Shown here: one piece after another, positions 2,084 through 61,267 of the stretch
Position numbering within the stretch: position 1 is the first letter of the stretch
Layout of the letters: every line of letters begins with the position of its first letter
Assembly (NCBI RefSeq): GCF_006345805.1
Contig: NC_043001.1
Coordinates: forward strand, 37,820,001 to 37,884,000
DNA from: Octopus sinensis
Lineage: Eukaryota
Direction: 5' to 3'
Length of the DNA stretch: 64,000 bases
Notes under the pieces: model-generated
What the model was told of the DNA's origin: nothing
The model's input: the letters and a program-made list of their open reading frames with translations, nothing else
Databases searched by the model: none
Position numbers and translations under genes: made by a program

Positions 2084-2130
<47 letters not shown>

Positions 2131-2326: not shown

Positions 2327-2345
2327 ATAATAATAATAATAATAA

Positions 2346-9923: not shown

Positions 9924-9925
<2 letters not shown>

Positions 9926-9998
<73 letters not shown>

Positions 9999-39084: not shown

Positions 39085-39353
39085 CAGAGACCAATGCCAG
39101 TACCCCCTGACTAGCTCTCATGCCAGTGGCATTTAAAAAGTACCATCCAAAAGGGATCAATGCCAGGCCCACCAGACTGGCTCCTGTGCTGGTGGTACAT
39201 AAAAAGCACCCACTACACTCTCAGGAAGTGATCCAGCTGTAGAAACATTGCCAGATCAGAGTGGAGCCTGGTGCAGCTGCTGGCTCTCCAGACCTCAGTC
39301 AAACTGTCCAACCCATGCCAGCATGGAAAACAGGTTTTAAAGATGATGATGAT
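39085..39353 (+). mobile_element. Older RTE 3' UTR fragment
   Basis: Terminal motif and GAT tail immediately upstream of the (AT)n that precedes the array. Confidence 0.8.
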
Positions 39354-39396
39354 GGTATATACATATATATATACAAATATATATATATATATATAT

Positions 39397-42300
39397 GGTG
39401 GGCCACGACCCCCCCGTTCCTCTTCAATTGTCTTATATCTCTTTCGATCGCCATTCGGCCCCTTTCTCCGCCACCCTATATGCATATAAACCAGCGACTG
39501 ATTTCAACGGCCTCACTTGAATTCAGACTGGTATCCGACTCCCTACGAAAATACGAAATACGAAATATGAATCCAAGCTAAGCATCTATATTTAATTTCA
39601 ACCCGTGTACCTACTTAACTATCTGCAACTGATCTGATCTTTTAGTTAGCCCTGTTTTATCTCTATTAGTATTATTGTTATGACTTGTGAAATTTAGCCT
39701 CACGCCTTGTGTCTTTTTTATATGTACATATAATTCTATAGTTCATCTTAATTATATATCGTTGTCTCATGTCTTGTGTTAAATATATATTTAATCTTAA
39801 AGCTTGCCCCTAATTTTATTTTATTTTATCGATCAGTCTCACGCCTCGTAGATATAGAATAAATGTATTTATAATTTATAGCTCCTTATCGTCCACGCTT
39901 CTCCCATAGATTAGGCAAAATTTAGGTATTTATTTATAGCTACTAATAACTATTTCTCTCCCAAGAAGGGATGGCTGCCGGCCGATTCTTGGTGGGCCAC
40001 GACCCCCCCGTTCCTCTTCAATTGTCTTATATCTCTTTCGATCGCCATTCGGCCCCTTCTCTCCGCCACCCTATCCATCCTCCCTATACGCATATAAACC
40101 AGCGACTGATTTCAACGGCCTCACTTGAATTCAGACTGGTATCCGACTCCCTACGAAAATACGAAATACGAAATATGAATCCAAGCTAAGCAATCTATAT
40201 TTAATTTCAACCCGTGTACCTACTTAACTATCTGCAACTGATCTGATCTTTTAGTTAGCCCTGTTTTATCTCTATTAGTATTATTGTTATGACTTGTGAA
40301 ATTTAGCCTCACGCCTTGTGTCTTTTTTTATATGTACATATAATTCTATAGTTCATCTTAATTATATATCGTTGTCTCATGTCTTGTGTTAAATATATAT
40401 TTAATCTTAAAGCTTGCCCCTAATTTTATTTTATTTTATCGATCAGTCTCACGCCTCGTAGATATAGAATAAATGTATTTATAATTTATAGCTCCTTATC
40501 GTCCACGCTTCTCCCATAGATTAGGCAAAATTTAGGTATTTATTTATAGCTACTAATAACTATTTCTCTCCCAAGGAAAGGAAGAATGGCTGCCGGCCGA
40601 TTCTTGGTGGGCCACGACCCCCCCGTTCCTCTTCAATGTCTTATATCTCTTTCGATCGCCATTCGGCCCCTTTCTCCCGCCCCTCTCCGCCACCCTATGC
40701 ATATAAACCAGCGACTGATTTCAACGGCCTCACTTGAATTCAGACTGGTATCCGACTCCCTACGAAAATACGAAATACGAAATATGAATCCAAGCTAAGC
40801 AATCTATATTTAATTTCAACCCGTGTACCTACTTAACTATCTGCAACTGATCTGATCTTTTAGTTAGCCCTGTTTTATCTCTATTAGTATTATTGTTATG
40901 ACTTGTGAAATTTAGCCTCACGCCTTGTGTCTTTTTTATATGTACATATAATTCTATAGTTCATCTTAATTATATATCGTTGTCTCATGTCTTGTGTTAA
41001 ATATATATTTAATCTTAAAGCTTGCCCCTAATTTTATTTTATTTTATCGATCAGTCTCACGCCTCGTAGATATAGAATAAATGTATTTATAATTTATAGC
41101 TCCTTATCGTCCACGCTTCTCCCATAGATTAGGCAAAATTAGGTATTTATTTATAGCTACTAATAACTATTTCTCTCCCAAGAAGGAGAATGGCTGCCGG
41201 CCGATTCTTGGTGGGCCACGACCCCCCGTTCCTCTTCAATTGTCTTATATCTCTTTCGATCGCCATTCGGCCCCTTTCTCTCCGCCACCCTATATGCATA
41301 TAAACAGCGACTGATTTCAACGGCCTCACTTGAATTCAGACTGGTATCCGACTCCCTACGAAATACGAAATACGAAATATGAATCCAAGCTAAGCAATCT
41401 ATATTTAATTTCAACCCGTGTACCTACTTAACTATCTGCAACTGATCTGATCTTTTAGTTAGCCCTGTTTTATCTCTATTAGTATTATTGTTATGACTTG
41501 TGAAATTTAGCCTCACGCCTTGTGTCTTTTTTATATGTACATATAATTCTATAGTTCATCTTAATTATATATCGTTGTCTCATGTCTTGTGTTAAATATA
41601 TATTTAATCTTAAAGCTTGCCCCTAATTTTATTTTATTTTATCGATCAGTCTCACGCCTCGTAGATATAGAATAAATGTATTTATAATTTATAGCTCCTT
41701 ATCGTCCACGCTTCTCCCATAGATTAGGCAAAATTTAGGTATTTATTTATAGCTACTAATAACTATTTCTCTCCTAAGAAAGGAATGGCTGCCGGCCGAT
41801 TCTTGGTGGGCCACGACCCCCCCGTTCCTCTTCAATTGTCTTATATCTCTTTCGATCGCCATTCGGCCCCTTCTCTCCGCCACCCTATATGCATATAAAC
41901 CAGCGACTGATTTCAACGGCCTCACTTGAATTCAGACTGGTATCCGACTCCCTACGAAATACGAAAAACGAAATATGAATCCAAGCTAAGCAATCTATAT
42001 TTAATTTCAACCCGTGTACCTACTTAACTATCTGCAACTGATCTGATCTTTTAGTTAGCCCTGTTTTATCTCTATTAGTATTATTGTTATGACTTGTGAA
42101 ATTTAGCCTCACGCCTTGTGTCTTTTTTTATATGTACATATAATTCTATAGTTCATCTTAATTATATATATCGTTGTCTCATGTCTTGTGTTAAATATAT
42201 ATTTAATCTTAAAGCTTGCCCCTAATTTTATTTTATTTTATCGATCAGTCTCACGCCTCGTAGATATAGAATAAATGTATTTATAATTTATAGCTCCTTA

Positions 42301-45300
42301 TCGTCCACGCTTCTCCCATAGATTAGCAAAATTTAGGTATTTATTTATAGCTACTAATAACTATTTCTCCCAAGAAAGAATGGCTGCCGGCCGATTCTTG
42401 GTGGGCCACGACCCCCCCCCGTTTTCTCTTCAATTGTCTTATATCTCTTTCGATCGCCATTCGGCCCCTTTCTCCGCCACCCTATATGCATATAACCAGC
42501 GACTGATTTCAACGGCCTCACTTGAATTCAGACTGGTATCCGACTCCCTACGAAAATACGAAATACGAAATATGAATCCAAGCTAAGCAATCTATATTTA
42601 ATTTCAACCCGTGTACCTACTTAACTATCTGCAACTGATCTGATCTTTTAGTTAGCCCTGTTTTATCTCTATTAGTATTATTGTTATGACTTGTGAAATT
42701 TAGCCTCACGCCTTGTGTCTTTTTTATATGTACATATAATTCTATAGTTCATCTTAATTATATATCGTTGTCTCATGTCTTGTGTTAAATATATATTTAA
42801 TCTTAAAGCTTGCCCCTAATTTTATTTTATTTTATCGATCAGTCTCACGCCTCGTAGATATAGAATAAATGTATTTATAATTTATAGCTCCTTATCGTCC
42901 ACGCTTCTCCCATAGATTAGGCAAAATTTAGGTATTTATTTATAGCTACTAATAACTATTTCTCTCCCAAGAAGGAAGAATGGCTGCCGGCCGATTCTTG
43001 GTGGGCCACGACCCCCCCCGTTCCTCTTCAATTGTCTTATCTCTTTCGATCGCCATTCGGCCCCTTTCTCCGCCACCCTATATGCATATAAACCAGCGAC
43101 TGATTTCAACGGCCTCACTTGAATTCAGACTGGTATCCGACTCCCTACGAAAATACGAAATACGAAATATGAATCCAAGCTAAGCAATCTATATTTAATT
43201 TCAACCCGTGTACCTACTTAACTATCTGCAACTGATCTGATCTTTTAGTTAGCCCTGTTTATCTCTATTAGTATTATTGTTATGACTTGTGAAATTTAGC
43301 CTCACGCCTTGTGTCTTTTTTATATGTACATATAATTCTATAGTTCATCTTAATTATATCGTTGTCTCATGTCTTGTGTTAAATATATATTTAATCTTAA
43401 AGCTTGCCCCTAATTTTATTTTATTTTATCGATCAGTCTCACGCCTCGTAGATATAGAATAAATGTATTTATAATTTATAGCTCCTTATCGTCCACGCTT
43501 CTCCATAGATTAGGCAAAATTTAGGTATTTATTTATAGCTACTAATAACTATTTCTCTCCCAGGAAGGAAGAATGGCTGCCGGCCGATTCTTGGTGGGCC
43601 ACGACCCCCCCCGTTCCTCTTCAATTGTCTTATATCTCTTTCGATCGCCATTCGGCCCCTTTCTCCGCCACCCTATATGCATATAAACCAGCGACTGATT
43701 TCAACGGCCTCACTTGAATTCAGACTGGTATCCGACTCCCTACGAAAATACGAAATACGAAATATGAATCCAAGCTAAGCAATCTATATTTAATTTCAAC
43801 CCGTGTACCTACTTAACTATCTGCAACTGATCTGATCTTTTAGTTAGCCCTGTTTTATCTCTATTAGTATTATTGTTATGACTTGTGAAATTTAGCCTCA
43901 CGCCTTGTGTCTTTTTTTATATGTACATATAATTCTATAGTTCATCTTAATTATATATCGTGTCTCATGTCTTGTGTTAAATATATATTTAATCTTAAAG
44001 CTTGCCCCTAATTTTATTTTATTTTATCGATCAGTCTCACGCCTCGTAGATATAGAATAAATGTATATAATTTTTTATAGCTCCTTATCGTCCACGCTTC
44101 TCCCATAGATTAGGCAAAATTTAGGTATTTATTTATAGCTACTAATAACTATTTCTCTCCTAAGGAAGGAAGAATGGCTGCCGGCCGATTCTTGGTGGGC
44201 CACGACCCCCCGTTCCTCTTCAATTGTCTTATATCTCTTTCGATCGCCATTCGGCCCCTTTCTCCGCCACCCTATATGCATATAAACCAGACTGATTTCA
44301 ACGGCCTCACTTGAATTCAGACTGGTATCCGACTCCCTACGAAAATACGAAATACGAAATATGAATCCAAGCTAAGCAATCTATATTTAATTTCAACCCG
44401 TGTACCTACTTAACTATCTGCAACTGATCTGATCTTTTAGTTAGCCCTGTTTTATCTCTATTAGTATTATTGTTATGACTTGTGAAATTTAGCCTCACGC
44501 CTTGTGTCTTTTTTATATGTACATATAATTCTATAGTTCATCTTAATTATATATCGTTGTCTCATGTCTTGTGTTAAATATATATTTAATCTTAAAGCTT
44601 GCCCCTAATTTTATTTTATTTTATCGATCAGTCTCACGCCTCGTAGATATAGAATAAATGTATTTATAATTTATAGCTCCTTATCGTCCACGCTTCTCCC
44701 ATAGATTAGGCAAAATTTAGGTATTTATTTATAGCTACTAATAACTATTTCTCTCCCAAGGAAGGAAGAATGGCTGCCGGCCGATTCTTGGTGGGCCACG
44801 ACCCCCCTTCCTCTTCAATTGTCTTATATCTCTTTCGATCGCCATTCGGCCCCTTTCTCCCTCCGCCACCCTATATGCATATAAACCAGCGACTGATTTC
44901 AACGGCCTCACTTGAATTCAGACTGGTATCCGACTCCCTACGAAAATACGAAATACGAAATATGAATCCAAGCTAAGCAATCTATATTTAATTTCAACCC
45001 GTGTACCTACTTAACTATCTGCAACTGATCTGATCTTTTAGTTAGCCCTGTTTTATCTCTATTAGTATTATTGTTATGACTTGTGAAATTTAGCCTCACG
45101 CCTTGTGTCTTTTTTTATATGTACATATAATTCTATAGTTCATCTTAATTATATATCGTTGTCTCATGTCTTGTGTTAAATATATATTTAATCTTAAAGC
45201 TTGCCCCTAATTTTATTTTATTTTATCGATCAGTCTCACGCCTCGTAGATATAGAATAAATGTATTTATAATTTATAGCTCCTTATCGTCCACGCTTCTC

Positions 45301-48300
45301 CCATAGATTAGGCAAAATTTAGGTATTTATTTATAGCTACTAATAACTATTTCTCTCCCAAGGAAGGAAGAATGGCTGCCGGCCGATTCTTGGTGGGCCA
45401 CGACCCCCCCCGTTCCTCTTCAATTGTCTTATATCTCTTTCGATCGCCATTCGGCCCCTTTCTCCGCCACCCTATATGCATATAAACCAGCGACTGATTT
45501 CAACGGCCTCACTTGAATTCAGACTGGTATCCGACTCCCTACGAAAATACGAAATACGAAATATGAATCCAAGCTAAGCAATCTATATTTAATTTCAACC
45601 CGTGTACCTACTTAACTATCTGCAACTGATCTGATCTTTTAGTTAGCCCTGTTTTATCTCTATTAGTATTATTGTTATGACTTGTGAAATTTAGCCTCAC
45701 GCCTTGTGTCTTTTTTTAATGTACATATAATTCTATAGTTCATCTTAATTATATATCGTTGTCTCATGTCTTGTGTTAAATATATATTTAATCTTAAAGC
45801 TTGCCCCTAATTTTATTTTATTTTATCGATCAGTCTCACGCCTCGTAGATATAGAATAAATGTATTTATAATTTATAGCTCCTTATCGTCCACGCTTCTC
45901 CCATAGATTAGGCAAAATTTAGGTATTTATTTATAGCTACTAATAACTATTTCTCTCCCAAGGAAGGAAGAATGGCTGCCGGCCGATTCTTGGTGGGCCA
46001 CGACCCCCCCGTTCCTCTTCAATTGTCTTATATCTCTTTCGATCGCCATTCGGCCCTTTCTCCGCCACCCTATATGCATATAAACCAGCGACTGATTTCA
46101 ACGGCCTCACTTGAATTCAGACTGGTATCCGACTCCCTACACGAAAATACGAAATACGAAATATGAATCCAAGCTAAGCAATCTATATTTAATTTCAACC
46201 CGTGTACCTACTTAACTATCTGCAACTGATCTGATCTTTTAGTTAGCCCTGTTTTATCTCTATTAGTATTATTGTTATGACTTGTGAAATTTAGCCTCAC
46301 GCCTTGTGTCTTTTTTTATATGTACATATAATTCTATAGTTCATCTTATTATATATATCGTTGTCTCATGTCTTGTGTTAAATATATATTTAATCTTAAA
46401 GCTTGCCCCTAATTTTATTTTATTTTATCGATCAGTCTCACGCCTCGTAGATATAGAATAAATGTATTTATAATTTATAGCTCCTTATCGTCCACGCTTC
46501 TCCCATAGATTAGGCAAAATTTAGGTATTTATTTATAGCTACTAATAACTATTTCTCTCCCAAGGAAGGAAGAATGGCTGCCGGCCGATTCTTGGTGGGC
46601 CACGACCCCCCCGTTTCCTCTTCAATTGTCTTATATCTCTTTCGATCGCCATTCGGCCCCTTTCTCTCCGCCACCCTATATGCATATAAACCAGCGACTG
46701 ATTTCAACGGCCTCACTTGAATTCAGACTGGTATCCGACTCCCTACGAAAATACGAAATACGAAATATGAATCCAAGCTAAGCAATCTATATTTAATTTC
46801 AACCCGTGTACCTACTTAACTATCTGCAACTGATCTGATCTTTTAGTTAGCCCTGTTTTATCTCTATTAGTATTATTGTTATGACTTGTGAAATTTAGCC
46901 TCACGCCTTGTGTTTTTTTATATGTACATATAATTCTATAGTTCATCTTAATTATATATCGTTGTCTCATGTCTTGTGTTAAATATATATTTAATCTTAA
47001 AGCTTGCCCCTAATTTTATTTTATTTTATCGATCAGTCTCACGCCTCGTAGATATAGAATAAATGTATTTATAATTTATAGCTCCTTATCGTCCACGCTT
47101 CTCCCATAGATTAGGCAAAATTTAGGTATTTATTTATAGCTACTAATAACTATTTCTCTCCCAAGGAAGGAAGAATGGCTGCCGGCCGATTCTTGGTGGG
47201 CCACGACCCCCCCGTTCCTCTTCAATTGTCTTATATCTCTTTCGATCGCCATTCGGCCCCTCTCTCTCGCCACCCTATATGCATATAAACCAGCGACTGA
47301 TTTCAACGGCCTCACTTGAATTCAGACTGGTATCCGACTCCCTACGAAAATACGAAATACGAAATATGAATCCAAGCTAAGCAATCTATATTTAATTTCA
47401 ACCCGTGTACCTACTTAACTATCTGCAACTGATCTGATCTTTTAGTTAGCCCTGTTTTATCTCTATTAGTATTATTGTTATGACTTGTGAAATTTAGCCT
47501 CACGCCTTGTGTCTTTTTTATATGTACATATAATTCTATAGTTCATCTTAATTATATATCGTTGTCTCATGTCTTGTGTTAAATATATATTTAATCTTAA
47601 AGCTTGCCCCTAATTTTATTTATTTTATCGATCAGTCTCACGCCTCGTAGATATAGAATAAATGTATTTATAATTTATAGCTCCTTATCGTCCACGCTTC
47701 TCCCATAGATTAGGCAAAATTTAGGTATTTATTTATAGCTACTAATAACTATTTCTCTCCCAAGGAAGGAAGAATGGCTGCCGGCCGATTCTTGGTGGGC
47801 CACGACCCCCCCCGTTCCTCTTCAATTGTCTTATATCTCTTTCGATCGCCATTCGGCCCCTCTTCTCCGCCACCCTATATGCATATAAACCAGCGACTGA
47901 TTTCAACGGCCTCACTTGAATTCAGACTGGTATCCGACTCCCTACGAAAATACGAAATACGAAATATGAATCCAAGCTAAGCAATCTATATTTTTCAACC
48001 CGTGTACCTACTTAACTATCTGCAACTGATCTGATCTTTTAGTTAGCCCTGTTTTATCTCTATTAGTATTATTGTTATGACTTGTGAAATTTAGCCTCAC
48101 GCCTTGTGTCTTTTTTATATGTACATATAATTCTATAGTTCATCTTAATTATATATCGTTGTCTCATGTCTTGTGTTAAATATATATTTAATCTTAAAGC
48201 TTGCCCCTAATTTTATTTTATTTTATCGATCAGTCTCACGCCTCGTAGATATAGAATAAATGTATTTATAATTTATAGCTCCTTATCGTCCACGCTTCTC

Positions 48301-51300
48301 CCATAGATTAGGCAAAATTTAGGTATTTATTTATAGCTACTAATAACTATTTCTCTCCCAAGAAGGAAGAATGGCTGCCGGCCGATTCTTGGTGGGCCAC
48401 GACCCCCCCGTTCCTCTTCAATTGTCTTATATCTCTTTCGATCGCCATTCGGCCCCTTTCTCCGCCACCTATATGCATATAAAACCAGCGACTGATTTCA
48501 ACGGCCTCACTTGAATTCAGACTGGTATCCGACTCCCTACGAAAATACGAAATACGAAATATGAATCCAAGCTAAGCAATCTATATTTAATTTCAACCCG
48601 TGTACCTACTTAACTATCTGCAACTGATCTGATCTTTTAGTTAGCCCTGTTTTATCTCTATTAGTATTATTGTTATGACTTGTGAAATTTAGCCTCACGC
48701 CTTGTGTCTTTTTTATATGTACATATAATTCTATAGTTCATCTTAATTATATATCGTTGTCTCATGTCTTGTGTTAAATATATATTTAATCTTAAAGCTT
48801 GCCCCTAATTTTATTTTATTTTATCGATCAGTCTCACGCCTCGTAGATATAGAATAAATGTATTTAATTTTATAGCTCCTTATCGTCCACGCTTCTCCCA
48901 TAGATTAGGCAAAATTTAGGTATTTATTTATAGCTACTAATAACTATTTCTCTCCCAAGGAAGGAAGAATGGCTGCCGGCCGATTCTTGGTGGGCCACGA
49001 CCCCCCCGTTCCTCTTCAATTGTCTTATATCTCTTTCGATCGCCATTCGGCCCCTTTCTCCCGCCACCCTATATGCATATAAACCAGCGACTGATTTCAA
49101 CGGCCTCACTTGAATTCAGACTGGTATCCGACTCCCTACGAAAATACGAAATACGAAATATGAATCCAAGCTAAGCAATCTATATTTAATTTCAACCCGT
49201 GTACCTACTTAACTATCTGCAACTGATCTGATCTTTTAGTTAGCCCTGTTTTATCTCTATTAGTATTATTGTTATGACTTGTGAAATTTAGCCTCACGCC
49301 TTGTGTCTTTTTTTATATGTACATATAATTCTATAGTTCATCTTAATTATATATCGTTGTCTCATGTCTTGTGTTAAATATATATTTAATCTTAAAGCTT
49401 GCCCCTAATTTTATTTTATTTTATCGATCAGTCTCACGCCTCGTAGATATAGAATAAATGTATTTATAATTTATAGCTCCTTATCGTCCACGCTTCTCCC
49501 ATAGATTAGGCAAAATTTAGGTATTTATTTATAGCTACTAATAACTATTTCTCTCCCAAGGAAGGAAGAATGGCTGCCGGCCGATTCTTGGTGGGCCACG
49601 ACCCCCCCCCGTTCCTCTTCAATTGTCTTATCTCTTTCGATCGCCATTCGCCCCCTCCCTTTCTCCGCCACCCTATATGCATATAAACCAGCGACTGATT
49701 TCAACGGCCTCACTTGAATTCAGACTGGTATCCGACTCCCTACGAAAATACGAAATACGAAATATGAATCCAAGCTAAGCAATCTATATTTAATTTCAAC
49801 CCGTGTACCTACTTAACTATCTGCAACTGATCTGATCTTTTAGTTAGCCCTGTTTTATCTCTATTAGTATTATTGTTATGACTTGTGAAATTTAGCCTCA
49901 CGCCTTGTGTCTTTTTTTATATGTACATATAATTCTATAGTTCATCTTAATTATATATCGTTGTCTCATGTCTTGTGTTAAATATATATTTAATCTTAAA
50001 GCTTGCCCCTAATTTTATTTTATTTTATCGATCAGTCTCACGCCTCGTAGATATAGAATAAATGTATTTATAATTTATAGCTCCTTATCGTCCACGCTTC
50101 TCCCATAGATTAGGCAAAATTTAGGTATTTATTTATAGCTACTAATAACTATTTCTCTCCAAGGAAGGAAGAATGGCTGCCGGCCGATTCTTGGTGGGCC
50201 ACGACCCCCCGTTCCTCTTCAATTGTCTTATATCTCTTTCGATCGCCATTCGGCCCCTTTCTCCGCCACCCTATATGCATATAAACCAGCGACTGATTTC
50301 ATTCAACGGCCTCACTTGAATTCAGACTGGTATCCGACTCCCTACGAAAATACGAAATACGAAATATGAATCCAAGCTAAGCAATCTATATTTAATTTCA
50401 ACCCGTGTACCTACTTAACTATCTGCAACTGATCTGATCTTTTAGTTAGCCCTGTTTTATCTCTATTAGTATTATTGTTATGACTTGTGAAATTTAGCCT
50501 CACGCCTTGTGTCTTTTTATATGTACATATAATTCTATAGTTCATCTTAATTATATATCGTTGTCTCATGTCTTGTGTTAAATATATATTTAATCTTAAA
50601 GCTTGCCCCTAATTTTATTTTATTTTATCGATCAGTCTCACGCCTCGTAGATATAGAATAAATGTATTTATAATTTATAGCTCCTTATCGTCCACGCTTC
50701 TCCCATAGATTAGGCAAAATTTAGGTATTTATTTATAGCTACTAATAACTATTTCTCTCCCAAGGAAGGAAGAATGGCTGCCGGCCGATTCTTGGTGGGC
50801 CACGACCCCCCCGTTCCTCTTCAATTGTCTTATATCTCTTTCGATCGCCATTCGGCCCCTTTCTCCGCCACCCTATATGCATATAAACCAGCGACTGATT
50901 TCAACGGCCTCACTTGAATTCAGACTGGTATCCGACTCCCTACGAAAATACGAAATACGAAATATGAATCCAAGCTAAGCAATCTATATTTAATTTCAAC
51001 CCGTGTACCTACTTAACTATCTGCAACTGATCTGATCTTTTAGTTAGCCCTGTTTTATCTCTATTAGTATTATTGTTATGACTTGTGAAATTTAGCCTCA
51101 CGCCTTGTGTCTTTTTTTATATGTACATATAATTCTATAGTTCATCTTAATTATATATCGTTGTCTCATGTCTTGTGTTAAATATATATTTAATCTTAAA
51201 GCTTGCCCCTAATTTTATTTTATTTTATCGATCAGTCTCACGCCTCGTAGATATAGAATAAATGTATTTATAATTTATAGCTCCTTATCGTCCACGCTTC

Positions 51301-54300
51301 TCCCATAGATTAGGCAAAATTTAGGTATTTATTTATAGCTACTAATAACTATTTCTCTCCCAAGGAAGGAAGAATGGCTGCCGGCCGATTCTTGGTGGGC
51401 CACGACCCCCCCGTTCCTCTTCAATTGTCTTATATCTCTTTCGATCGCCATTCGGCCCCTTTCTCCGCCACCCTATATGCATATAAACCAGCGACTGATT
51501 TCAACGGCCTCACTTGAATTCAGACTGGTATCCGACTCCCTACGAAAATACGAAATACGAAATATGAATCCAAGCTAAGCATCTATATTTAATTTCAACC
51601 CGTGTACCTACTTAACTATCTGCAACTGATCTGATCTTTTAGTTAGCCCTGTTTTATCTCTATTAGTATTATTGTTATGACTTGTGAAATTTAGCCTCAC
51701 GCCTTGTGTCTTTTTTTTATGTACATATAATTCTATAGTTCATCTTAATTATATATCGTTGTCTCATGTCTTGTGTTAAATATATATTTAATCTTAAAGC
51801 TTGCCCCTAATTTTATTTTATTTTATCGATCAGTCTCACGCCTCGTAGATATAGAATAAATGTATTTATAATTTATAGCTCCTTATCGTCCACGCTTCTC
51901 CCATAGATTAGGCAAAATTTAGGTATTTATTTATAGCTACTAATAACTATTTCTCTCCCAAGGAAGGAAGAATGGCTGCCGGCCGATTCTTGGTGGGCCA
52001 CGACCCCCCCCGTTCCTCTTCAATTGTCTTATCTCTTTCGATCGCCATTCGGCCCCTTTCTCCGCCACCCTATATGCATATAAACCAGCGACTGATTTCA
52101 ACGGCCTCACTTGAATTCAGACTGGTATCCGACTCCCTACGAAAATACGAAATACGAAATATGAATCCAAGCTAAGCAATCTATATTTAATTTCAACCCG
52201 TGTACCTACTTAACTATCTGCAACTGATCTGATCTTTTAGTTAGCCCTGTTTTATCTCTATTAGTATTATTGTTATGACTTGTGAAATTTAGCCTCACGC
52301 CTTGTGTCTTTTTTTATATGTACATATAATTCTATAGTTCATCTTAATTATATATCGTTGTCTCATGTCTTGTGTTAAATATATATTTAATCTTAAAGCT
52401 TGCCCCTAATTTTATTTTATTTTATCGATCAGTCTCACGCCTCGTAGATATAGAATAAATGTATTTATAATTTATAGCTCCTTATCGTCCACGCTTCTCC
52501 CATAGATTAGGCAAAATTTAGGTATTTATTTATAGCTACTAATAACTATTCTCTCTCCCAGGAAGGAAGAATGGCTGCCGGCCGATTCTTGGTGGGCCAC
52601 GACCCCCCCGTTCCTCTTCAATTGTCTTATATCTCTTTCGATCGCCATTCGGCCCCCTTTCTCCGCCACCCTATATGCATATAAACCAGCGACTGATTTC
52701 AACGGCCTCACTTGAATTCAGACTGGTATCCGACTCCCTACGAAAATACGAAATACGAAATATGAATCCAAGCTAAGCAATCTATATTTAATTTCAACCC
52801 GTGTACCTACTTAACTATCTGCAACTGATCTGATCTTTTAGTTAGCCCTGTTTTATCTCTATTAGTATTATTGTTATGACTTGTGAAATTTAGCCTCACG
52901 CCTTGTGTCTTTTTTTTATGTACATATAATTCTATAGTTCATCTTAATTATATATCGTTGTCTCATGTCTTGTGTTAAATATATATTTAATCTTAAAGCT
53001 TGCCCCTAATTTTATTTTATTTTATCGATCAGTCTCACGCCTCGTAGATATAGAATAAATGTATTTATAATTTATAGCTCCTTATCGTCCACGCTTCTCC
53101 CATAGATTAGGCAAAATTTAGGTATTTATTTATAGCTACTAATAACTATTTCTCTCCCAAGGAAGGAAGAATGGCTGCCGGCCGATTCTTGGTGGGCCAC
53201 GACCCCCCCGTTCCTCTTCAATTGTCTTATATCTCTTTCGATCGCCATTCGGCCCCTTTCTCCGCCACCCTATATGCATATAAACCAGCGACTGATTTCA
53301 ACGGCCTCACTTGAATTCAGACTGGTATCCGACTCCCTACGAAAATACGAAATACGAAATATGAATCCAAGCTAAGCAATCTATATTTATTTTCAACCCG
53401 TGTACCTACTTAACTATCTGCAACTGATCTGATCTTTTAGTTAGCCCTGTTTTATCTCTATTAGTATTATTGTTATGACTTGTGAAATTTAGCCTCACGC
53501 CTTGTGTCTTTTTTATATGTACATATAATTCTATAGTTCATCTTAATTATATATCGTTGTCTCATGTCTTGTGTTAAATATATATTTAATCTTAAAGCTT
53601 GCCCCTAATTTTATTTTATTTTATCGATCAGTCTCACGCCTCGTAGATATAGAATAAATGTATTTATAATTTATAGCTCCTTATCGTCCACGCTTCTCCC
53701 ATAGATTAGGCAAAATTTAGGTATTATTTATTTATAGCTACTAATAACTATTTCTCTCCCAGGAAGGAAGAATGGCTGCCGGCCGATTCTTGGTGGGCCA
53801 CGACCCCCCCGTTCCTCTTCAATTGTCTTATATCTCTTTCGATCGCCATTCGGCCCCCTTTCTCCGCCACCCTATATGCATAAAACCAGCGACTGATTTC
53901 AACGGCCTCACTTGAATTCAGACTGGTATCCGACTCCCTACGAAAATACGAAATACGAAATATGAATCCAAGCTAAGCAATCTATATTTAATTTCAACCC
54001 GTGTACCTACTTAACTATCTGCAACTGATCTGATCTTTTAGTTAGCCCTGTTTTATCTCTATTAGTATTATTGTTATGACTTGTGAAATTTAGCCTCACG
54101 CCTTGTGTCTTTTTTTTATGTACATATAATTCTATAGTTCATCTTAATTATATATCGTTGTCTCATGTCTTGTGTTAAATATATATTTAATCTTAAAGCT
54201 TGCCCCTAATTTTATTTTATTTTATCGATCAGTCTCACGCCTCGTAGATATAGAATAAATGTATTTATATTTATAGCTCCTTATCGTCCACGCTTCTCCC

Positions 54301-54365
54301 ATAGGTTAGGCAAAATTTATTATTTATTTATAGCTACTAATAACTATTTCTCTCCTAAGAAAGGA
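39397..54365 (+). repeat. Tandem array of ~25 near-identical ~600-bp monomers
   Basis: ATGGCTGCCG recurs 25 times from 39971 to 54366 at about 595-615 bp spacing; the first unit lacks its first ~20 nt; differences are mostly homopolymer lengths. Confidence 0.97.
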
Positions 54366-54506
54366 ATGGCTGCCGCCCGGTTTTCGCTGTGCACCCGCCC
54401 TCCCACCCCCACCACCGGTACAGGAAGTCCTAAATTTTTCTCATCCTTGTCTCCCTATACACTCAAAGTCTTACGCGCCACCCCCACCTCCTTCCATAAA
54501 AGGTAG
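54366..54506 (+). CDS. Short upstream ORF of the RTE element (46 aa, MAAARFSLCTRPP...HKR*)
   Basis: Open from ATG 54366 to TAG 54504-54506; the stop overlaps the GTG that opens the main frame (TAGTG). Confidence 0.55.
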   Translation: MAAARFSLCTRPPTPTTGTGSPKFFSSLSPYTLKVLRATPTSFHKR

Positions 54507-57500
54507 TGTTCAGTCATTGCAAGATATGTTTAGTGTTGTATACGAGGTTTGAACTTAAGTTCCATTGTTTGTCTATGAATACTGCCAAACGCGAGTTTTC
54601 TTTTCAGGTACATGACGCTATTAGGACCAATACCACTTCCACCCCCACCCACAGCCTCAGGGTTGGCACCCTCAACGTCGGCACACTGAAAGGCAGATCT
54701 GGCGAGATAGTTGAATTGCTTGAACGGAGGTGGGTTGATATATGCTGCATTCAAGAAGTGAGGTGGAGAGGAGGTTCTGCTAGGTTCCTCACAGGCAAAG
54801 GACAGAGGTACAAGATTTTCTGGGCTGGGAATACTGACGGAGTCGGGGGTGTGGGCATGCTTATCGCCGAAAAATGGGTAGATAAGGTAATCGAGGTAGT
54901 CAGAGTAAGTGACAGAATAATTAAGATTAGATTAGTGCTCCACCATAGTTTAGCAACTATTATATCGGCCTATGCCCCTCAGCCAGGGCTACCTGATGGA
55001 CAGAAAGACTGTTTCTATGACACCCTACTGCAGACCACATCATTGACGAACGACAGGGACCTTCTCTTTGTGGCTGGTGACTTCAATGGGCATGTTGGAC
55101 GACGTGCTGGGGGCTTCCATGGCGTGCATGGAGGCTACGGTTATGGTTCCCGCAACGAGGAGGGAACCAGGCTGCTGGAGTTCTGCGATGCGAATAGTCT
55201 TATGATTTGCAACACTAACTTCAGGAAACCGACAAGCCACCTGGTCACCTACCGATCGGGCCGGCATACTAGCCAAATCGACTACATCCTTGCCAGAAAA
55301 AGGGAAAGATGGCTGCTTATAAATGCCAAAACCTTCCCAAGTGAAGAATGCACCCCACAACATAGACTGGTAGTTAGTGACTTTAGGATCAGGACTAAGA
55401 GGGCGACTAGAAGACGACCAACATGGAGAAGAAGGGTCTGGAAGCTTAAAGACCCTGCGAATGGACAGAGATTTAGAGATATGTTATTTGAAGCTTTAGA
55501 CGAAATGGAAGGGAGTATAGCTACGCATGGGGTAGAAGACAACTGGACGCTTCTGAGGGACAACCTGCTGAAAGCCGCTGACCAGATCTGTGGCTGGTGC
55601 AAAGTCCCCTTAAGACCCAAAATAACGTGGTGGTGGAACAATATTGTTGACAGGGCTATTAGACAAAAGAAACAGGCTTGGAAGGCCTGGAAGAACGGTG
55701 GTAGCAGGGAAGTGTATCAGTCTGCCAGAAGGGAAGCCAGGAGACAGGTCTATCTAGCCAGAGGGAAGCAGAGAAGGAAAATTTGCCAATGTCCTGCGTC
55801 GTGAGGATGAAAGACTTGAGGTCTTTCGTGTTGCAAGCCAGTGTGTGAGAGAGAATCGCGACGTGGTAGGAGAGAAATGTGTTCGCAAGGAGGACGGTTC
55901 ACTTGCACTTAATGAGGGTGCAAAGAGAGAGACTTGGAGACGCCACTATGATAGGTTGCTGAATGAAGAAAATGAATGGGATAAAGAGAGTCTGCCGAAT
56001 GTCGACCCAACAGAGGGACCAGCAATCCGAGTTAACAGTTCCTTAGTAGATAAGGCAATTAGAAGCATGAAAACAGGGAAAGCCCCAGGCCCATCAGGAA
56101 TTACTGCAGAGATGCTCAAAATATCTGGTGGTGTCGGCTATAGCTTAGTCACCCCGTATAGTTAACCAGGTGATACACGAGGGGGTCATACCCAATGACT
56201 GGTGTAGCAGCATAATAGTCAACTGCTACAAAGGTAAAGGCGACGCCCTAGAGACAAATAACTACAGGGGCATCAAGCTGCTGGATCAGGTAATGAAGGT
56301 TACGGAGAGGGTTGTAGCCCAACTAATTAGAGAGAGAGTTACCTTAGATGATATGCAGTTTGGGTTCGTGCCAGGGAAAAGTACTACTGATGCTATATTC
56401 CTGGTAAGACAGCTGCAGGAGAAATACCTAGCCAAAGATAAGCCCTTGTACCTGGCTTTTGTTGACTTGGAGAAAGCCTTTAACAGGGTCCCCCGGTCCC
56501 TTATCTGGTGGTCAATGAGGAAACTAGGGATAGAAGAATGGTTGGTGAGAGCTGTGCAAGCCATGTACAGAGACGCTGCTAGTAAGGTGAGGGTGGGCAA
56601 CGAGTACAGTGAAGAATTCCGGGTAGAGGTTGGGGTCCACCAAGGTTCAGTCCTCAGTCCCCTCCTATTTATCATAGTCCTCCAGGCAATAACGGAGGAA
56701 TTCAAGACAGGTTGCCCCTGGGAGCTCCTCTATGCTGATGACCTTGCTCTAATTGCTGAGTCACTATCAGAACTGGAGGAGAAGTTCCAGGTGTGGAAAC
56801 AAGGATTAGAATCGAAGGGCCTTAGAATCAACCTAGCCAAAACCAAAGTTCTAATAAGTAGGAAGGTAGATCAATCACAAACGCCTTCAGGTAGATGGCC
56901 CTGCTCGATCTGTAAAAAGGTGTAGGTAGAAACTCTATAAGATGCACCAAGTGTAAGCTATGGACACATAAGAGGTGCAGCAATGTCAAAGGAAGGCTAA
57001 CTAGGAAAATAGTTTTTGTCTGTGGCAAATGCTCAGGAGCAATAAACACTGGAAATATGCAGAGACCAACTTCTGCCACGTTCCAGGGAGACAAACTAGA
57101 AGTAGTTGATAGCTTCCGCTACCTAGGAGACCAAGTCAGTAGCGGGGGTGGGTGTGCTGAAAGTGTAACTGCTAGAGTAAGAATAGCCTGGGCAAAGTTT
57201 AGAGAGCTCTTACCCCTGCTGGTGACAAAAGGCCTCTCGCTCAGAGTAAAAGGCAGACTGTATGATGCATGTGTACGTACAGCCATGCTACATGGTAGTG
57301 AAACATGGGCCGTGACTGCTGAGGATATGCGTAAGCTCGCAAGAAATGAAGCCAGTATGCTCCGATGGATGTGTAATGTCAGTGTTCATAATCGTCAGAG
57401 TGTAAGTTCCTTGAGAGAAAAGCTGAACCTAAGAAGCGTCAGTTGTGGCGTGCAAGAGAGACGGCTGCGCTGGTATGGTCATGTGACAAGAAAGGCTGAA

Positions 57501-57683
57501 GATAGTTGTGTGCAAAAGTGCTACACCCTAGCAGTGGAGGGAACCTGTGGAAGAGGTAGACCCAGGAAAACCTGGGACGAGGTGGTGAAGCACGACCTTC
57601 GAACTTTAGGTCTCACTAAGGAAATGTCTAGAGACCGAGACCTATGGAAGTATGCTGTGCATGAGAAGACCCGGCAAGACTAG
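54506..57683 (+). CDS. RTE LINE polyprotein: AP endonuclease, reverse transcriptase, PHD-like finger, C-terminal domain (three frameshift sites)
   Basis: APE motifs TLNVG, IQEVRW, SAYAPQ, AGDFNGH, QIDYIL; RT motifs FVDLEKAF, GVHQGSVLSPLLF, YADD; frame breaks near 55765, 56155 and 56918 all fall in homopolymer runs; no in-frame stops once corrected (~1,040 aa from ATG 54575). Confidence 0.93.
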
Positions 57684-57699
57684 TCAGGCCATAACCCGT

Positions 57700-59165
57700 G
57701 GCCCCGACCTGGGACGTAGTCAGTCCTGTGCATACCTTCCTTCTTGTGACACTTATGAAGACCTGTTGAGGCAAGTGAAAATCAAATCAAATCAAAACAA
57801 ATCAAAATAGATGAACATCAGTGGAATTGTATTCTTTGGGTACCAGTGCCGGTGGCACACAAGAAAACCACCCAAACGTGGCCGTAACCAGTACCGCATC
57901 GACTGGCCTCCGTGCTGTGGGCACAACAAACACCATCCGATCGTGGCCGTTCGCCAGCCTCATCTGGCACCTGTGCCGGTGGCACATAAAGACACCATCC
58001 GAAGACCCGGCGACGTAGTCAGTCCACCTGTGCATACCTTCCCTCTTATGACACTTGTGAAGACCTGTTGAGGCAAGTGTGTGACACTTGTGAAGACCTG
58101 TTGAGGCAGAGGCAAGTGTGTGACACTTGTGGAGACCTGTTGAGGCAAGTGTGTGACCCTTGTGAAGACCTGTTGAGGCAAGTGAAAATCAAACCAAATC
58201 AAAATAGATGATATCAATGGAATTTGTATCTTTGTGGTTCCAGTACCGGTGGCACACAAGAAAACCATCCGAACGTGGCCGTAGCTGGTACCCATCGACT
58301 GGCCTCCGTGCTGTGGGCACAACAAACACCATCTGATCGTGGCCGTTCGCCAGCCTCACCTGGCCATGTGTCGGTGGCACATAAAAACACCATCCAAAGA
58401 CCCGGCGACGTAGTCAGTCCACCTGTGCATACCTTCCCTCTTATGACACTTGTGAAGACCTGTTGAGGCAGAGGCAAGTGTGTGACACTTTGTGAAGACC
58501 TGTTGAGGCAGAGGCAAGTGTGTGACACTTGTGGAGACCTGTTGAGGCAAGTGTGTGACACGCGTGACACTTGTGAAGACCTGTTGAGGCAAGTGAAAAT
58601 CAAACCAAATCAAAATAGATGAACATCAATGGAATTTGTATCTTTGTGGTTCCAGTACCGGTGGCACACAAGAAAACCATCCGATCGTGGCCGTTCGCCA
58701 GCCACATCTGGCACCTGTGTCGGTGGCACATAAAGACACCATCCGAAGACCCGGCGACGTAGACAGTCCACCTGTGCATACCTTCCTTCTTGTGACACTT
58801 GTGAAAACCTGTTGAGGCAAGTGAAAATCAAATCAAATCAAATCAAAACAAATCAAAATAGATGAACATAAATGGAATTTGTATCTTTGTGGTACCAGTG
58901 CCGGTGGCACACAAGAAAATCATCCGAACGTGGCCGTAGCCAGTACCGCATAGACTGGCCTCCGTGCTTTGGGGACGTAACAAACACCATCCGATCGTGG
59001 CCGTCCGCCAGCCTCATCTGGCACCTGTGTCGGTGGCACATAAAAACACCATCCGAGCGTGGCCGTCTGCCAGCCTCGTCTGGCACCTGTGTCGGTGGCA
59101 CATAAAAACACACATCCGAGCGTGGCCGTTCGCCAGCCTCGTCTGGCACCTGTGTCGGTGGCACA
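57700..59165 (+). repeat. Hierarchical tandem duplications in the RTE 3' UTR
   Basis: Four ~300-420-bp blocks starting GACGTAG(T/A)CAGTCC, containing 22-30-bp GTGACACTTGTGAAGACCTGTTGAGGCAAGT subrepeats and ~55-bp GGTGGCACATAAA subrepeats. Confidence 0.88.
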
Positions 59166-59341
59166 TAAAATCACCCACTACACTCTCGGAGTGGTTGGCG
59201 TTAGGAAGGGCATCCAGCTGTAGAAACACTGCCAGATCTGACTGGCCTGGTGCAGCCTTCGGGCTCCCCAGACCCCAGTTGAACCGTCCAACCCATGCTA
59301 GCATGGAAAACGGACGCTAAATGATGATGATGATGATGATG

Positions 59342-59374
<33 letters not shown>

Positions 59375-59376
59375 TG

Positions 59377-60393
59377 TCGGTGGCACATAAAAAGCACCAT
59401 CCGAATGTGGGATCCCGGAACATCTCGCTGTGCTTGAGGAGACCTGTTGAGTCAAGTGCATGTACATGTACATGAGAATCGAACCAAATATCAATGGAAA
59501 CAGTAGTAGTTGTGATACCTGTGCTGGTGACACATAAAAAGCACCATCCGAACATGGCCATTGCCAGTGCAGCCTCCACTGGCTTCTGGGCCGGTGGCAC
59601 ATAAAAAGCTCCATCCGAACGTGACCGATGCCAACCCCGCCAGCACCATCCGAACGTGGCTGTTGCCAGTGCAGCCTCCACCTCATTCTACCTTCTGTGC
59701 CGGTGGCACATAAAAATCTCCATCCGAACGTGACCGATGCCAACCCTGCCTCGAATGGCTTCTGTGCCGGTAGCACATAAAAAGCACCATCCGAACGTGG
59801 CCGATGCCAGCACCGCCCCGACTGGCTTCCTGTGCCGGTGGCACATAAAAAGCACCAAGCACCATCCGAGCGTGGCTGACGCCAGCACCGCCTCGACTGG
59901 CTTCTGTGCAGGTGGCACATCGCTGTGCTTGAGGAGACCAGTTGAGTCAAGTGCATGTACATGAACATCGAACCAAATATCAATGAAAACAGTAGTTGTG
60001 ATACCTGTGCCGGTGACACATAAAAAGCACCATCCGAACGTGACCGATGCCAACCCTGCCTCGAATGGCTTCTGTGCTGGTGGCACATAAAAAGCACCAT
60101 CCAAACGTGGCCGATGCCAGCACCGCCTTGACTGGCTTCTGTGCCGGTAGCACATAAAAAAAGCACCAACCGATCGTGGCCGATGCCAGACCCCTCTGGC
60201 ACCTGTGCAGGTGGCACGTAAAAAGCACCCACTACACTCGCGGAGTGGTTGGCGTTAGGAAGGGCATCCAGCTGTAGAAACACTGCCAGACCAGACTGGA
60301 CCCTGGGGCAGCCCCTGGCTCCCCTGACCCCGGTCGAACCGTCCAACCCGTGCTAGCGCGGAGAACAGACGTTAAACGATGATGATGATGATG
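59377..60393 (+). mobile_element. Second RTE 3' UTR-derived fragment (other subfamily) with internal duplication and GAT tail
   Basis: Multiple GGTGGCACATAAAAAGCACCATCCGAAC units; block CGCTGTGCTTGAGGAGACC..TGAGTCAAGTGCATG at ~59426 and ~59921; terminal motif and tail. Confidence 0.85.
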
Positions 60394-60413
60394 ATATATA
60401 TATATACATAATA

Positions 60414-60455
<42 letters not shown>

Positions 60456-60457
<2 letters not shown>

Positions 60458-60701
60458 AATTGAGATAGGGGTTGCAAATTCAACCCTCCATGGGATAACA
60501 TATATCCAATATACTGCTAGTGAATTACCCAACAAAGTTAATACATAAATGTTAAGAATTGCGATGCAATTAATTCATTTACTGTATTACATGGGCAAAG
60601 GTAAAATTATTTTTACCATAAATTAATAATACAAAATCAGAAAATGGAGAAATACATCTAAATCATTAATCAACTATCAGATAATACCCAATCACATAAA
60701 A

Positions 60702-60758
<57 letters not shown>

Positions 60759-60998
60759 AATTGAGATAGGGGTTGCAAATTCAACCCTCCATGGGATAAC
60801 ATATATCCAATATACTGCTAGTGAATTACCCAACAAAGTTAATACATAAATGTTAAGAATTGCGATGCAATTAATTCATTTACTGTATTACATGGGCAAA
60901 GGTAAAATTATTTTTACCATAAATTAATAATACAAAATCAGAAAATGGAGAAATACATCTAAATCATTAATCAACTATCAGATAATACCCAATCACAT
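60456..60998. repeat. 301-bp-period direct tandem duplication of a (TA)n-flanked repeat
   Basis: CAAATTGAGATAGGGG...CCCAATCACATA at 60456 and 60757; a diverged relative follows at about 61321-61555. Confidence 0.9.
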
Positions 60999-61267
60999 AC
61001 TTTATTGAACCACTACATAAGAACATTAAGATTAAACAAAACAGCGTTCTTTGAATGTGTAATACAATACAATAGGTACAATCATTACAAGAGGATATAA
61101 ATAAATATCCTCTTGTAATGATTGTACCTATTGTATTGTATTACTCATTCATGTACGCTGTTTTGTTTAATCTTAATGTTCTTATGTAGTGGTTCAATAA
61201 AGTATGTGATTGGGTATTATCTGATAGTTGATTAATGATTTAGATGTATTTCTCCATTTTCTAATTT

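What the first reader, a model, noticed from the sequence alone, without database searches (positions are those of the whole stretch)
39397..59343. RTE LINE carrying a 15-kb head of ~25 tandem 600-bp monomers homologous to its own 5' end
Seen: the array starts just after (AT)10 and runs without a spacer into the RTE element, which ends in (GAT)n followed by (AT)8, so both flanks could be a target duplication in an AT microsatellite. The first 35 nt of the LINE (ATGGCTGCCGCCCGGTTTTCGCTGTGCACCCGCCC) match the monomer start (ATGGCTGCCGGCCGATTCTTGGTGGGCCACGACCC) at about 25/35 positions without gaps. Known: rodent L1 uses tandem ~200-bp 5' monomers as additive promoters; I know of no equivalent for RTE. 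Inference: this is either an RTE lineage with a monomeric, expandable promoter or a satellite being born from a LINE 5' end. A 20-kb retrotransposition is unlikely, so most expansion probably happened after insertion.
Basis: partly seen in the sequence, partly recalled or inferred. Interest (0 to 1): 0.88.

Follow-up and report, generated by a model that had tools for sequence, protein, structure and literature searches.

The report
Octopus LINE with 25-unit repeated head
A young jumping gene (an RTE-type LINE) in an octopus genome is joined directly at its front end to 25 near-identical 600-bp tandem copies, most likely its own leader sequence amplified on the spot; this is a snapshot of a satellite repeat forming from a transposon, but a promoter role like that of mouse L1 monomers is unproven.

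Summary
Bases 39397-54375 are 25 head-to-tail units of 593-615 bp, all on the + strand and 97-100% identical. They run without a spacer into an APE-RT(-PHD) LINE that ends in (GAT)8 at 59343. The host is an octopus. The reported 25/35 match is correct, but 10 of the matches are run-on from the last unit. The next 25 nt match 15/25, which is weak but real (best of 599 registers, P about 0.002). Beyond that there is no similarity.

Core units carry 0-1 substitutions and edge units 3-11, so most copies arose recently and in place. The ORF has no in-frame stop, only three 1-nt frameshifts at homopolymers.

The closest reachable relative (O. bimaculoides, about 85% nt identity) shares the 5' UTR only from 54383 onward and has no monomer. 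No other copy of the unit could be found. The AT-microsatellite "target duplication" is not specific: 4 of 8 tails of this family are followed by (AT)n.

Best reading: the unit is this lineage's distal 5' UTR in a monomer-plus-tether layout, expanded locally after insertion. Promoter function and family-wide monomers remain untested. I rate it a new variant of known kinds, of moderate interest.

The parts
39091..39354 (+). Upstream short non-autonomous (SINE-like) element with the same ~175-nt RTE tail, ending in (GAT)4
   Evidence: blastn to the LINE tail/3'UTR and to element G, 74-78% identity; sequence
39355..39396 (.). Imperfect (TA)n microsatellite between the upstream tail and the array; the candidate left half of the insertion target
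   Evidence: TRF period 2, 20.5 copies; sequence
39397..54375 (+). Tandem array of 25 units of about 600 bp. It starts at monomer position 20. Each unit has a GC/CpG-rich head of about 100 nt and an AT-rich body of about 500 nt. Core units m08-m22 are nearly identical; edge units are more diverged.
54366..54400 (+). Array/LINE junction: a 10-nt run-on of the last unit (ATGGCTGCCG), then 25 nt that are a degenerate copy of the monomer start (15/25)
54376..54577 (+). Non-repeated 5' UTR ('tether'). It is conserved at about 69% with the O. bimaculoides relative from 54383 onward. A 46-codon upstream ORF runs from the ATG at 54366 to 54506.
54578..57683 (+). LINE ORF: APE endonuclease, reverse transcriptase and a partial PHD finger. 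The frame is open from 54500; the first in-frame ATG is at 54578. There are three 1-nt frameshifts, within 55758-55802, 56149-56163 and 56916-56923, and no in-frame stop.
   Evidence: Pfam PF03372, PF00078, PF00628; tblastn frame map; stop map
57684..59165 (+). 3' UTR built from about 4 copies of a 350-400-nt higher-order repeat, itself made of 33/40-nt and 62-nt sub-repeats
59166..59343 (+). Conserved RTE tail of about 150 nt plus the (GAT)8 terminus, shared with 7 other copies in the window
59344..59376 (.). (AT)7-8 followed by T19; the candidate right half of the insertion target
59377..60395 (+). Downstream non-autonomous element G with 67-nt repeats, the same tail and (GAT)6, again followed by (AT)n

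Best explanation
This is a young RTE-clade LINE copy in an octopus genome. The ~600-bp unit is the distal part of its own 5' UTR.

The source element probably already had a monomer-plus-tether layout: at least one full unit, followed by a non-repeated 5' UTR that begins with a decayed copy of the unit's first ~35 nt. The element probably inserted into an (AT)n microsatellite beside older elements of the same tail family. Afterwards the units were multiplied in place by unequal exchange or replication slippage, with one variant recently amplified about 15-fold. The result is a 15-kb array, i.e. a macrosatellite forming from a LINE 5' UTR.

Shown: the anatomy, the in-register short homology, the homogenised core with diverged edges, and the near-intact ORF. 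Inferred: that the unit is LINE-derived rather than foreign, that two or more units predate this copy, and that the expansion followed insertion. By analogy only: that units act as promoter modules as in mouse L1.
For: (1) The array and LINE are collinear, in the same orientation and without a spacer. Chance abutment of a 15-kb array within about 10 nt of the 5' end of the only full-length LINE in the 64-kb window is very unlikely.

(2) The tether's first 25 nt match the monomer in register at 15/25, the unique maximum of 599 registers, P about 0.002.

(3) The unit-to-unit junction (GCCGATTCT) differs from the terminal junction (CCCGGTTTTCGC), although the units are 97-100% identical. The unit-to-unit junction is therefore older than the present array.

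(4) Three boundaries fall within about 10 nt of the same phase: the array starts at monomer position 20, identity ends at position 10, and conservation with the O. bimaculoides relative starts at tether position 18. This is expected if units were stacked upstream of an ancestral 5' terminus and carry a copy of it.

(5) Core units have 0-1 substitutions, edge units 3-11. Unit m14 carries the m05/m06/m23 haplotype inside the core. This is the signature of in-place unequal exchange.

(6) The ORF has no in-frame stop in about 1,060 codons and only three 1-nt frameshifts at homopolymers, so the copy is young.

(7) AT repeats lie outside the array+LINE unit on both sides and not between array and LINE.

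(8) The element and its relatives are prone to tandem repeats: the 3' UTR has higher-order repeats, and L003 has 5' 33-nt repeats.
Against: No second copy of the unit was found, so LINE ownership of the unit rests on this single locus.

The nearest relative with a 5' end has no detectable monomer homology upstream of the shared UTR.

Of the unit's 600 nt, 565 match nothing in the LINE.

The 15/25 match is short and lies in C-rich sequence.

Each unit carries an AATAAA on the sense strand, which would hinder transcription through many units.

The AT flanks are not specific.

Copy number and the many 1-nt indels could include long-read consensus errors: 76 indel events against 98 substitutions.
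Confidence: 0.5

Rival explanations
1. Functional monomeric promoter, the strong form of the reader's first option. This RTE family generally carries a variable number of 600-bp monomers. Each monomer is a promoter module with its own start site near position 20, as in mouse L1 A/Tf/Gf. The 25-unit array is an extreme allele of that system. This reading overlaps with the best explanation and adds function and family-wide variability.
For: The monomer-tether layout with a degenerate monomer start in the tether. The 5'-most unit is truncated at position 20, as expected if transcription starts inside a unit. The GC/CpG-rich head has 8 CpG in 100 nt, and there is a TATAAA at position 109. The mouse L1 precedent has an average of 2.3-3.7 monomers plus a tether (PMC11602158).
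Against: No other copy was seen. The closest relative lacks monomers. Variation among units is concentrated in the GC-rich head, so there is no sign of constraint there. There is an AATAAA in every unit. Twenty-five units and a 20-kb RNA are far beyond anything known to retrotranspose. There are no transcript data.
Confidence: 0.25
2. Single-unit 5' UTR or flank, amplified purely locally. The inserted LINE had one copy of the 585-nt stretch, either as its own 5' UTR or as non-LINE DNA lying upstream. One illegitimate tandem duplication had its left breakpoint at the fragile (TA)n and its right breakpoint 10-19 nt into the conserved LINE 5' end, with a 9-nt junction filler. Unequal exchange then did the rest. 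The array says nothing about LINE biology.
For: The array is almost exactly an integral number of units, starting at position 20 and ending at position 10, as a simple (a..b)n duplication predicts. Conservation with the relative starts right at the boundary. The core/edge pattern shows local growth. No other monomer copy was found.
Against: It needs a breakpoint to fall within about 10-20 nt of the LINE's conserved 5' boundary by chance. It leaves the in-register 15/25 match (P about 0.002) and the distinct 9-nt junction unexplained, unless filler DNA happened to resemble the tether. If the 585 nt were plain flank, the LINE's (AT)n target should also be seen just 5' of the LINE, and it is not.
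Confidence: 0.2
3. Unrelated satellite. The LINE either landed at the edge of a pre-existing 600-bp satellite, or copied satellite units from its source locus by 5' transduction (read-through from an upstream promoter).
For: Of the unit's 600 nt, 565 have no similarity to the LINE, and the relative lacks the unit. 5' transduction of flanking DNA, including satellite DNA, by LINEs is documented for L1 (review PMC6947457).
Against: No unit lies downstream of the LINE, so the LINE did not insert inside an array. Landing exactly at an array edge, in the same orientation, with the array's two end phases only 10 nt apart and a P of about 0.002 in-register match to the LINE's first bases, would all have to be coincidences. 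The array edges are no older than the LINE: about 1-2% divergence against an ORF with no in-frame stop.
Confidence: 0.1
4. Assembly artefact. The junction, or much of the copy number, comes from mis-assembly of long noisy reads across a repeat.
For: Indel events (76) are nearly as frequent as substitutions (98) and sit mostly in homopolymers. All three ORF frameshifts are at homopolymers. Two 100%-identical tandem duplications occur nearby, at 60422-60999 and 62269-62513.
Against: The units carry structured, shared substitution variants with an edge/core gradient, which is not what collapse or spurious expansion gives. Both array ends are unique junctions read through cleanly. Assemblers usually collapse arrays rather than inflate them.
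Confidence: 0.07

Closest known systems
Mouse/rat L1 monomeric 5' UTR (A, Tf, Gf monomers plus tether)
   Same: Sense-oriented tandem units lie directly upstream of a non-repeated tether and the ORF. The tether begins with a decayed unit start. The 5'-most unit is truncated. The LINE is autonomous, with APE and RT.
   Different: It belongs to a different clade (RTE, with no gag-like ORF1). Units are about 600 bp rather than about 200 bp. There are 25 units against an average of 2.3-3.7 (PMC11602158). Promoter activity and family-wide variability are shown for L1 and are untested here. The nearest relative lacks the units.
Satellites derived from tandem repeats inside retrotransposon UTRs (e.g. 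Ogre LTR elements in Lathyrus sativus, PMC7004042)
   Same: A short tandem array that belongs to a retroelement's non-coding region occasionally expands in place into a long array.
   Different: Those cases are LTR elements in plants, and the short arrays are documented in many dispersed copies. Here the element is a LINE 5' UTR in a mollusc, and only one locus has been seen.
Octopus RTE elements (RTE-2_OV of O. vulgaris; RTE of O. bimaculoides; PMC9115989)
   Same: The same host genus and clade; an APE+RT ORF of about 1,000-1,100 aa; a simple-repeat 3' end; RTE-2_OV is reported with a 5' UTR of about 600 nt.
   Different: [quoted passage not shown] This copy has a 1.66-kb 3' UTR of minisatellites plus a conserved tail.
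Satellite-like arrays carried by Helentron/MITE elements in bivalves (PMC7492417)
   Same: Molluscan mobile elements that carry and spread tandem repeats.
   Different: Those are DNA transposons with internal arrays of short units, dispersed at many loci. They are not a LINE 5' end.

Membership tests
RTE clade of non-LTR retrotransposons | One large ORF with an N-terminal APE endonuclease followed by a reverse transcriptase | tested here: met
   PF03372 (E 4.7e-8) and PF00078 (E 1.3e-32) in order. They are collinear with relatives across three frames.
RTE clade of non-LTR retrotransposons | No gag-like ORF1; at most a very short upstream ORF | tested here: met
   Only a 46-codon upstream ORF (54366-54506) precedes the main frame. 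There is no long ORF in the units or the 5' UTR.
RTE clade of non-LTR retrotransposons | The 3' end finishes in a short simple repeat instead of poly(A), and the tail is shared with SINE-like derivatives | tested here: met
   The (GAT)8 terminus. The same ~175-nt tail plus (GAT)n is found on 7 other short or truncated copies.
RTE clade of non-LTR retrotransposons | The RT groups with RTE references in a phylogeny | not tested
   Indirect only. The best named hits are 'craniofacial development protein 2-like', an annotation that, from my own knowledge, derives from a BovB/RTE endonuclease. Octopus RTEs are described in PMC9115989. No reference tree was built.
L1-type monomeric 5' UTR (monomers plus tether promoter) | Two or more sense-oriented tandem units directly upstream of a non-repeated tether and the ORF | tested here: met
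   25 units, no spacer, tether 54376-54577
L1-type monomeric 5' UTR (monomers plus tether promoter) | The feature belongs to the family: many copies, with a variable number of units | tested here: inconclusive
   No other copy of the family could be reached. The relative at about 85% nt identity (L001) has no unit. All external searches for the unit were empty, but none of them covers octopus genomes as DNA.
L1-type monomeric 5' UTR (monomers plus tether promoter) | Units have promoter activity and transcription starts inside a unit | not testable with these tools
   The only indirect hints are the 5'-most unit starting at position 20, the CpG-rich head and a TATAAA at position 109.
TE-derived satellite / macrosatellite | A long head-to-tail array with a homogenised core and more diverged edges | tested here: met
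   15 kb. Core units have 0-1 substitutions and edge units 3-11. Shared variants are shuffled between units.
TE-derived satellite / macrosatellite | The unit is demonstrably derived from the parent element's sequence | tested here: inconclusive
   Only about 35 nt show homology to the LINE: 10 identical plus 15/25, P about 0.002. The remaining 565 nt have no match in the LINE or in relatives.
TE-derived satellite / macrosatellite | The same unit also forms arrays detached from the element elsewhere in the genome | not testable with these tools
   No whole-genome octopus DNA search is available. There are no other copies in the 64-kb window or in 44 kb of related loci.

The most novel reading that the evidence does not exclude
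An RTE lineage in octopus has independently evolved a mouse-L1-like modular 5' end. The 600-bp monomers each carry a copy of the ancestral 5'-terminal initiator, with transcription starting near monomer position 20. They are stacked upstream of a tether, vary in number among copies, and set promoter strength. The same modules seed macrosatellites when they over-expand. This would be the first monomeric-promoter LINE outside L1, in a genus where RTE activity in the brain is under debate.
Probability: 0.25. Interest if true: 0.75.

Novelty: new variant of a known kind. Interest (0 to 1): 0.5.

Why it matters
If the unit really is this RTE lineage's 5' UTR, the locus captures an early step in making a satellite from a LINE leader. 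The parent element is still almost intact and the array's history is readable in its edge and core units. It would also show that the monomer-plus-tether solution to the 5'-truncation and promoter problem of LINEs, so far a textbook peculiarity of rodent L1, has arisen in a different clade and phylum. In octopus this touches current work on RTE expression in the brain (PMC9115989, PMC13282606), because monomer number could govern which copies are transcribed. If instead it is a one-off local duplication, it is an ordinary macrosatellite and of little wider interest.

Tried and rejected
(1) TRF found no array because its longest period is 500. I used the repeat finder and an anchor search instead.

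(2) By eye, L001's upstream region seemed to share CATATAAAC...GAATCCAG and CATAGATTGGC with the monomer. Local alignment, global alignment and anchored leftward extension were all no better than shuffles, so I rejected it.

(3) The monomer-ORF translation searched against 5.8 billion proteins gave 0 hits. Exact look-ups of the two most recurrent monomer ORFs found nothing on record.

(4) Exact 24-mer scans of JGI metagenomes and GTDB genomes gave 0 hits. Protein-seeded locus searches in both collections found no relatives.

(5) The RT-domain search for closer family members found nothing above 81% identity, and the best hits were on short contaminated 'bacterial' contigs.

(6) K-mer searches of the supplements of Petrosino 2022 and of the 2026 O. 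vulgaris repeat paper gave 0 hits, but only 0.4 MB and 6 kB of text are held.

(7) Rfam and tRNA scans of the units and junction found nothing relevant, so the unit is not a known RNA gene, SINE head or ribozyme.

(8) I considered RTE-2_OV (5' UTR of about 600 nt) as the same element. This is probably not so, because the ORF length and 3' UTR architecture differ.

(9) YY1-like ATGGC/GCCAT cores at the unit junction are too short to count as evidence. I note them only as a lead.

(10) I tested AT repeats on both sides as a family-wide insertion signature. It holds for copy G but not for copy B, so it is not decisive.


Full report
OBSERVATION

TRF lists no array between 39.4 and 54.4 kb, but only because its longest period is 500. 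The repeat finder gives 25 copies spaced 594-610 nt apart. The anchor ATGGCTGCCG occurs 25 times on the + strand and never on the - strand. A 39-nt probe matches 25 times against 0 expected. The units are 593-615 nt; the first is 574 nt. At aligned bases they are 97-100% identical. No unit occurs elsewhere in the window.

The array begins directly after an imperfect (TA)n at 39355-39396. It continues without a spacer into a sequence encoding an APE endonuclease (PF03372), a reverse transcriptase (PF00078) and a partial PHD finger. After that come a 1.66-kb 3' UTR, a conserved tail and (GAT)8 ending at 59343, then (AT)7-8 and T19.

HOST AND ELEMENT

The best named protein hits are from Octopus bimaculoides (82% aa identity) and O. 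sinensis (65%), annotated 'craniofacial development protein 2-like'. The 3' UTR and tail are 93-94% identical to a copy in O. sinensis. The following all fit the RTE clade already described in octopus (PMC9115989):
- a single APE+RT ORF;
- only a 46-codon upstream ORF in front of it;
- a simple-repeat terminus;
- a tail shared with seven short or truncated copies in the window.

I did not build a phylogeny.

The ORF has no in-frame stop in about 1,060 codons. It has three 1-nt frameshifts, each confined to a window that contains a homopolymer: 55758-55802, 56149-56163 and 56916-56923. The array itself shows 76 indel events against 98 substitutions, mostly in homopolymers. Some of these indels may therefore be long-read consensus errors. 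Either way, the copy is young.

THE CLAIMED HOMOLOGY

The 25/35 count is right. The first 10 matches are simply the last unit running on. The next 25 nt match 15/25. This is the best of all 599 possible registers (next best 13), with shuffle P = 0.0014 and binomial P = 0.0019. Beyond position 35 the similarity is random. A local alignment of the next 1.5 kb of the LINE against the unit scores below shuffles. So about 35 nt of the LINE's non-repeated 5' UTR are a decayed copy of the unit's start, and the other 565 nt of the unit match nothing in the LINE.

RELATIVES

I could reach three related loci:
- L001 (O. bimaculoides chromosome) carries a copy about 85% identical in the ORF. Its 5' UTR aligns with the window from 54383 onward at 69%. 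Upstream of that anchor there is no similarity to the unit by local alignment, global alignment or anchored extension.
- L002 (O. sinensis) and L003 hold more distant relatives, also without the unit.
- L003 has unrelated 33-nt tandem repeats in front of its ORF.

Every route to other copies of the unit came back empty:
- a translated-ORF search;
- exact ORF look-ups;
- pattern scans of metagenomes and prokaryote genomes;
- protein-seeded locus searches;
- an RT search for closer family members;
- two paper supplements.

None of these resources covers octopus genomes as searchable DNA. The negatives are therefore weak, and the family-level question stays open.

ARRAY HISTORY

Units m08-m22 carry 0-1 substitutions against the consensus, apart from m13 and m15 (3-4 each) and the outliers m14 and m21 (9 and 7). 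Units m01-m07 and m23-m24 carry 3-11. Unit m14 carries the haplotype of m05, m06 and m23 inside the core. This is the pattern expected from unequal exchange in place, with one variant recently amplified about 15-fold. Most of the 15 kb was therefore made at this locus or, less likely, at a source locus. It was not carried by a 20-kb RNA. Edge-unit divergence of about 0.5-1.8% is of the same order as the LINE's own decay.

BOUNDARIES

Three boundaries fall within about 10 nt of the same phase of the 600-nt period:
- the array starts at unit position 20;
- unit identity ends at position 10 of the would-be 26th unit;
- conservation with the O. bimaculoides relative starts at position 18.

In addition, the unit-to-unit junction (GCCGATTCT) differs from the terminal junction (CCCGGTTTTCGC), although the units are nearly identical. 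The unit-to-unit junction is therefore older than the present array.

The simplest model has units stacked upstream of an ancestral 5' terminus, each carrying a copy of that terminus. The source element already had at least one unit plus the tether, and the inserted copy begins where transcription started inside a unit. This is the layout of rodent L1 (PMC11602158).

A competing model is one illegitimate duplication with breakpoints at the (TA)n and just inside the LINE. It explains the integral unit number. It does not explain the P of about 0.002 match or the distinct junction, and it needs a breakpoint coincidence.

A foreign satellite, whether the LINE inserted at its edge or copied it by 5' transduction, needs several coincidences, and no unit lies downstream of the LINE.

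FLANKS

The upstream (TA)n directly follows the (GAT)4 tail of another element of the same tail family (39091-39354). (AT)n follows (GAT)n in 4 of 8 tails. The family evidently likes AT microsatellites, or creates them. AT repeats do lie outside the array+LINE unit on both sides and not between array and LINE, which mildly favours one insertion unit. Copy G shows the same pattern, but copy B does not.

FUNCTION

Nothing here tests promoter activity. The unit has a CpG-rich head of about 100 nt, a TATAAA at position 109 and an AATAAA at position 483 on the sense strand. The AATAAA would hinder transcription through many units. Variation among units is concentrated in the head, so this array shows no constraint there. 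There is no Rfam or tRNA signal.

COMPARISON AND NOVELTY

Tandem 5' monomers with a tether are known for rodent L1. Expansion of retroelement UTR repeats into satellites is known, for example for Ogre elements (PMC7004042). Molluscan transposons that carry tandem repeats are also known (PMC7492417). Four full-text searches found no RTE with a monomeric 5' end and no octopus satellite of this kind (a fifth returned nothing because of its term choice). That is absence in one library, not proof. I rate the locus a new variant of known kinds.

VERDICT

The anatomy is real and unusual. The most likely reading (about 0.5) is a LINE 5' UTR unit, already in a monomer-plus-tether layout, blown up locally into a nascent macrosatellite. 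The stronger claim of a family-wide, functional monomeric promoter has a probability of about 0.25. A single genome-wide BLAST of the unit would settle most of this. Interest: 0.5.

Noticed in passing
window 9924-12065 (- strand): A second RTE copy, 78% identical to the main LINE over ORF positions 1358-3066. It is 5'-truncated and has the same tail and a (GAT) run of more than 25 units.
   Followed up: partly
window 9364-9533(+), 16850-17022(-), 19249-19353(+), 31148-31312(+), 39091-39354(+), 59377-60395(+): Short non-autonomous or truncated elements that share the LINE's ~175-nt tail and (GAT)n end. In 4 of the 8 tails, (AT)n follows directly, which suggests an insertion preference for AT microsatellites or tail-seeded microsatellites.
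   Followed up: partly
window 57684-59165: The LINE's 3' UTR is itself about 4 copies of a 350-400-nt higher-order repeat, made of 33/40-nt and 62-nt sub-repeats. Element G (59377-60395) has matching 67-nt repeats. Both ends of this element family are prone to tandem repeats.
   Followed up: partly
window 60422-60999 and 62269-62513: Two perfectly identical tandem duplications (301 nt x1.9 and 122 nt x2.0). They are either very recent events or assembly artefacts.
   Followed up: no
L003 100-843: A 66%-identical RTE relative from another assembly (GCA_024449705.1) has about 13 copies of an unrelated 33-nt tandem repeat directly upstream of its APE ORF. The public collection calls this repeat a 232-aa 'gene'.
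   Followed up: partly
window 54366-54506; L001 9767-9880: A short upstream ORF (46 codons; 37 in the O. bimaculoides relative) reads through the conserved 5' UTR block in the same frame in both copies and ends where the main frame opens. This is reminiscent of the tiny ORF1 described for some RTEs (my own knowledge).
   Followed up: partly
window 56916-57030: A partial PHD finger after the RT (PF00628, 20.7 bits, below the cut-off of 24, cut by a frameshift). Many relatives carry PF00628.
   Followed up: partly
protein hits P0013, P0030, P0084, P0121, P0138: RTE fragments 35-81% identical to this LINE (the closest, P0121 and P0138, at 80-81%) are deposited on short contigs labelled as bacteria (Thiodiazotropha MAG, Salmonella, Wolbachia, Herbaspirillum MAG, E. 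coli). This is almost certainly animal DNA contamination in those records.
   Followed up: no
monomer consensus positions 321-429 vs 460-566: A weak internal sub-repeat (63% over 113 nt, E = 0.003) hints that the unit itself grew by an older duplication of about 140 nt.
   Followed up: no
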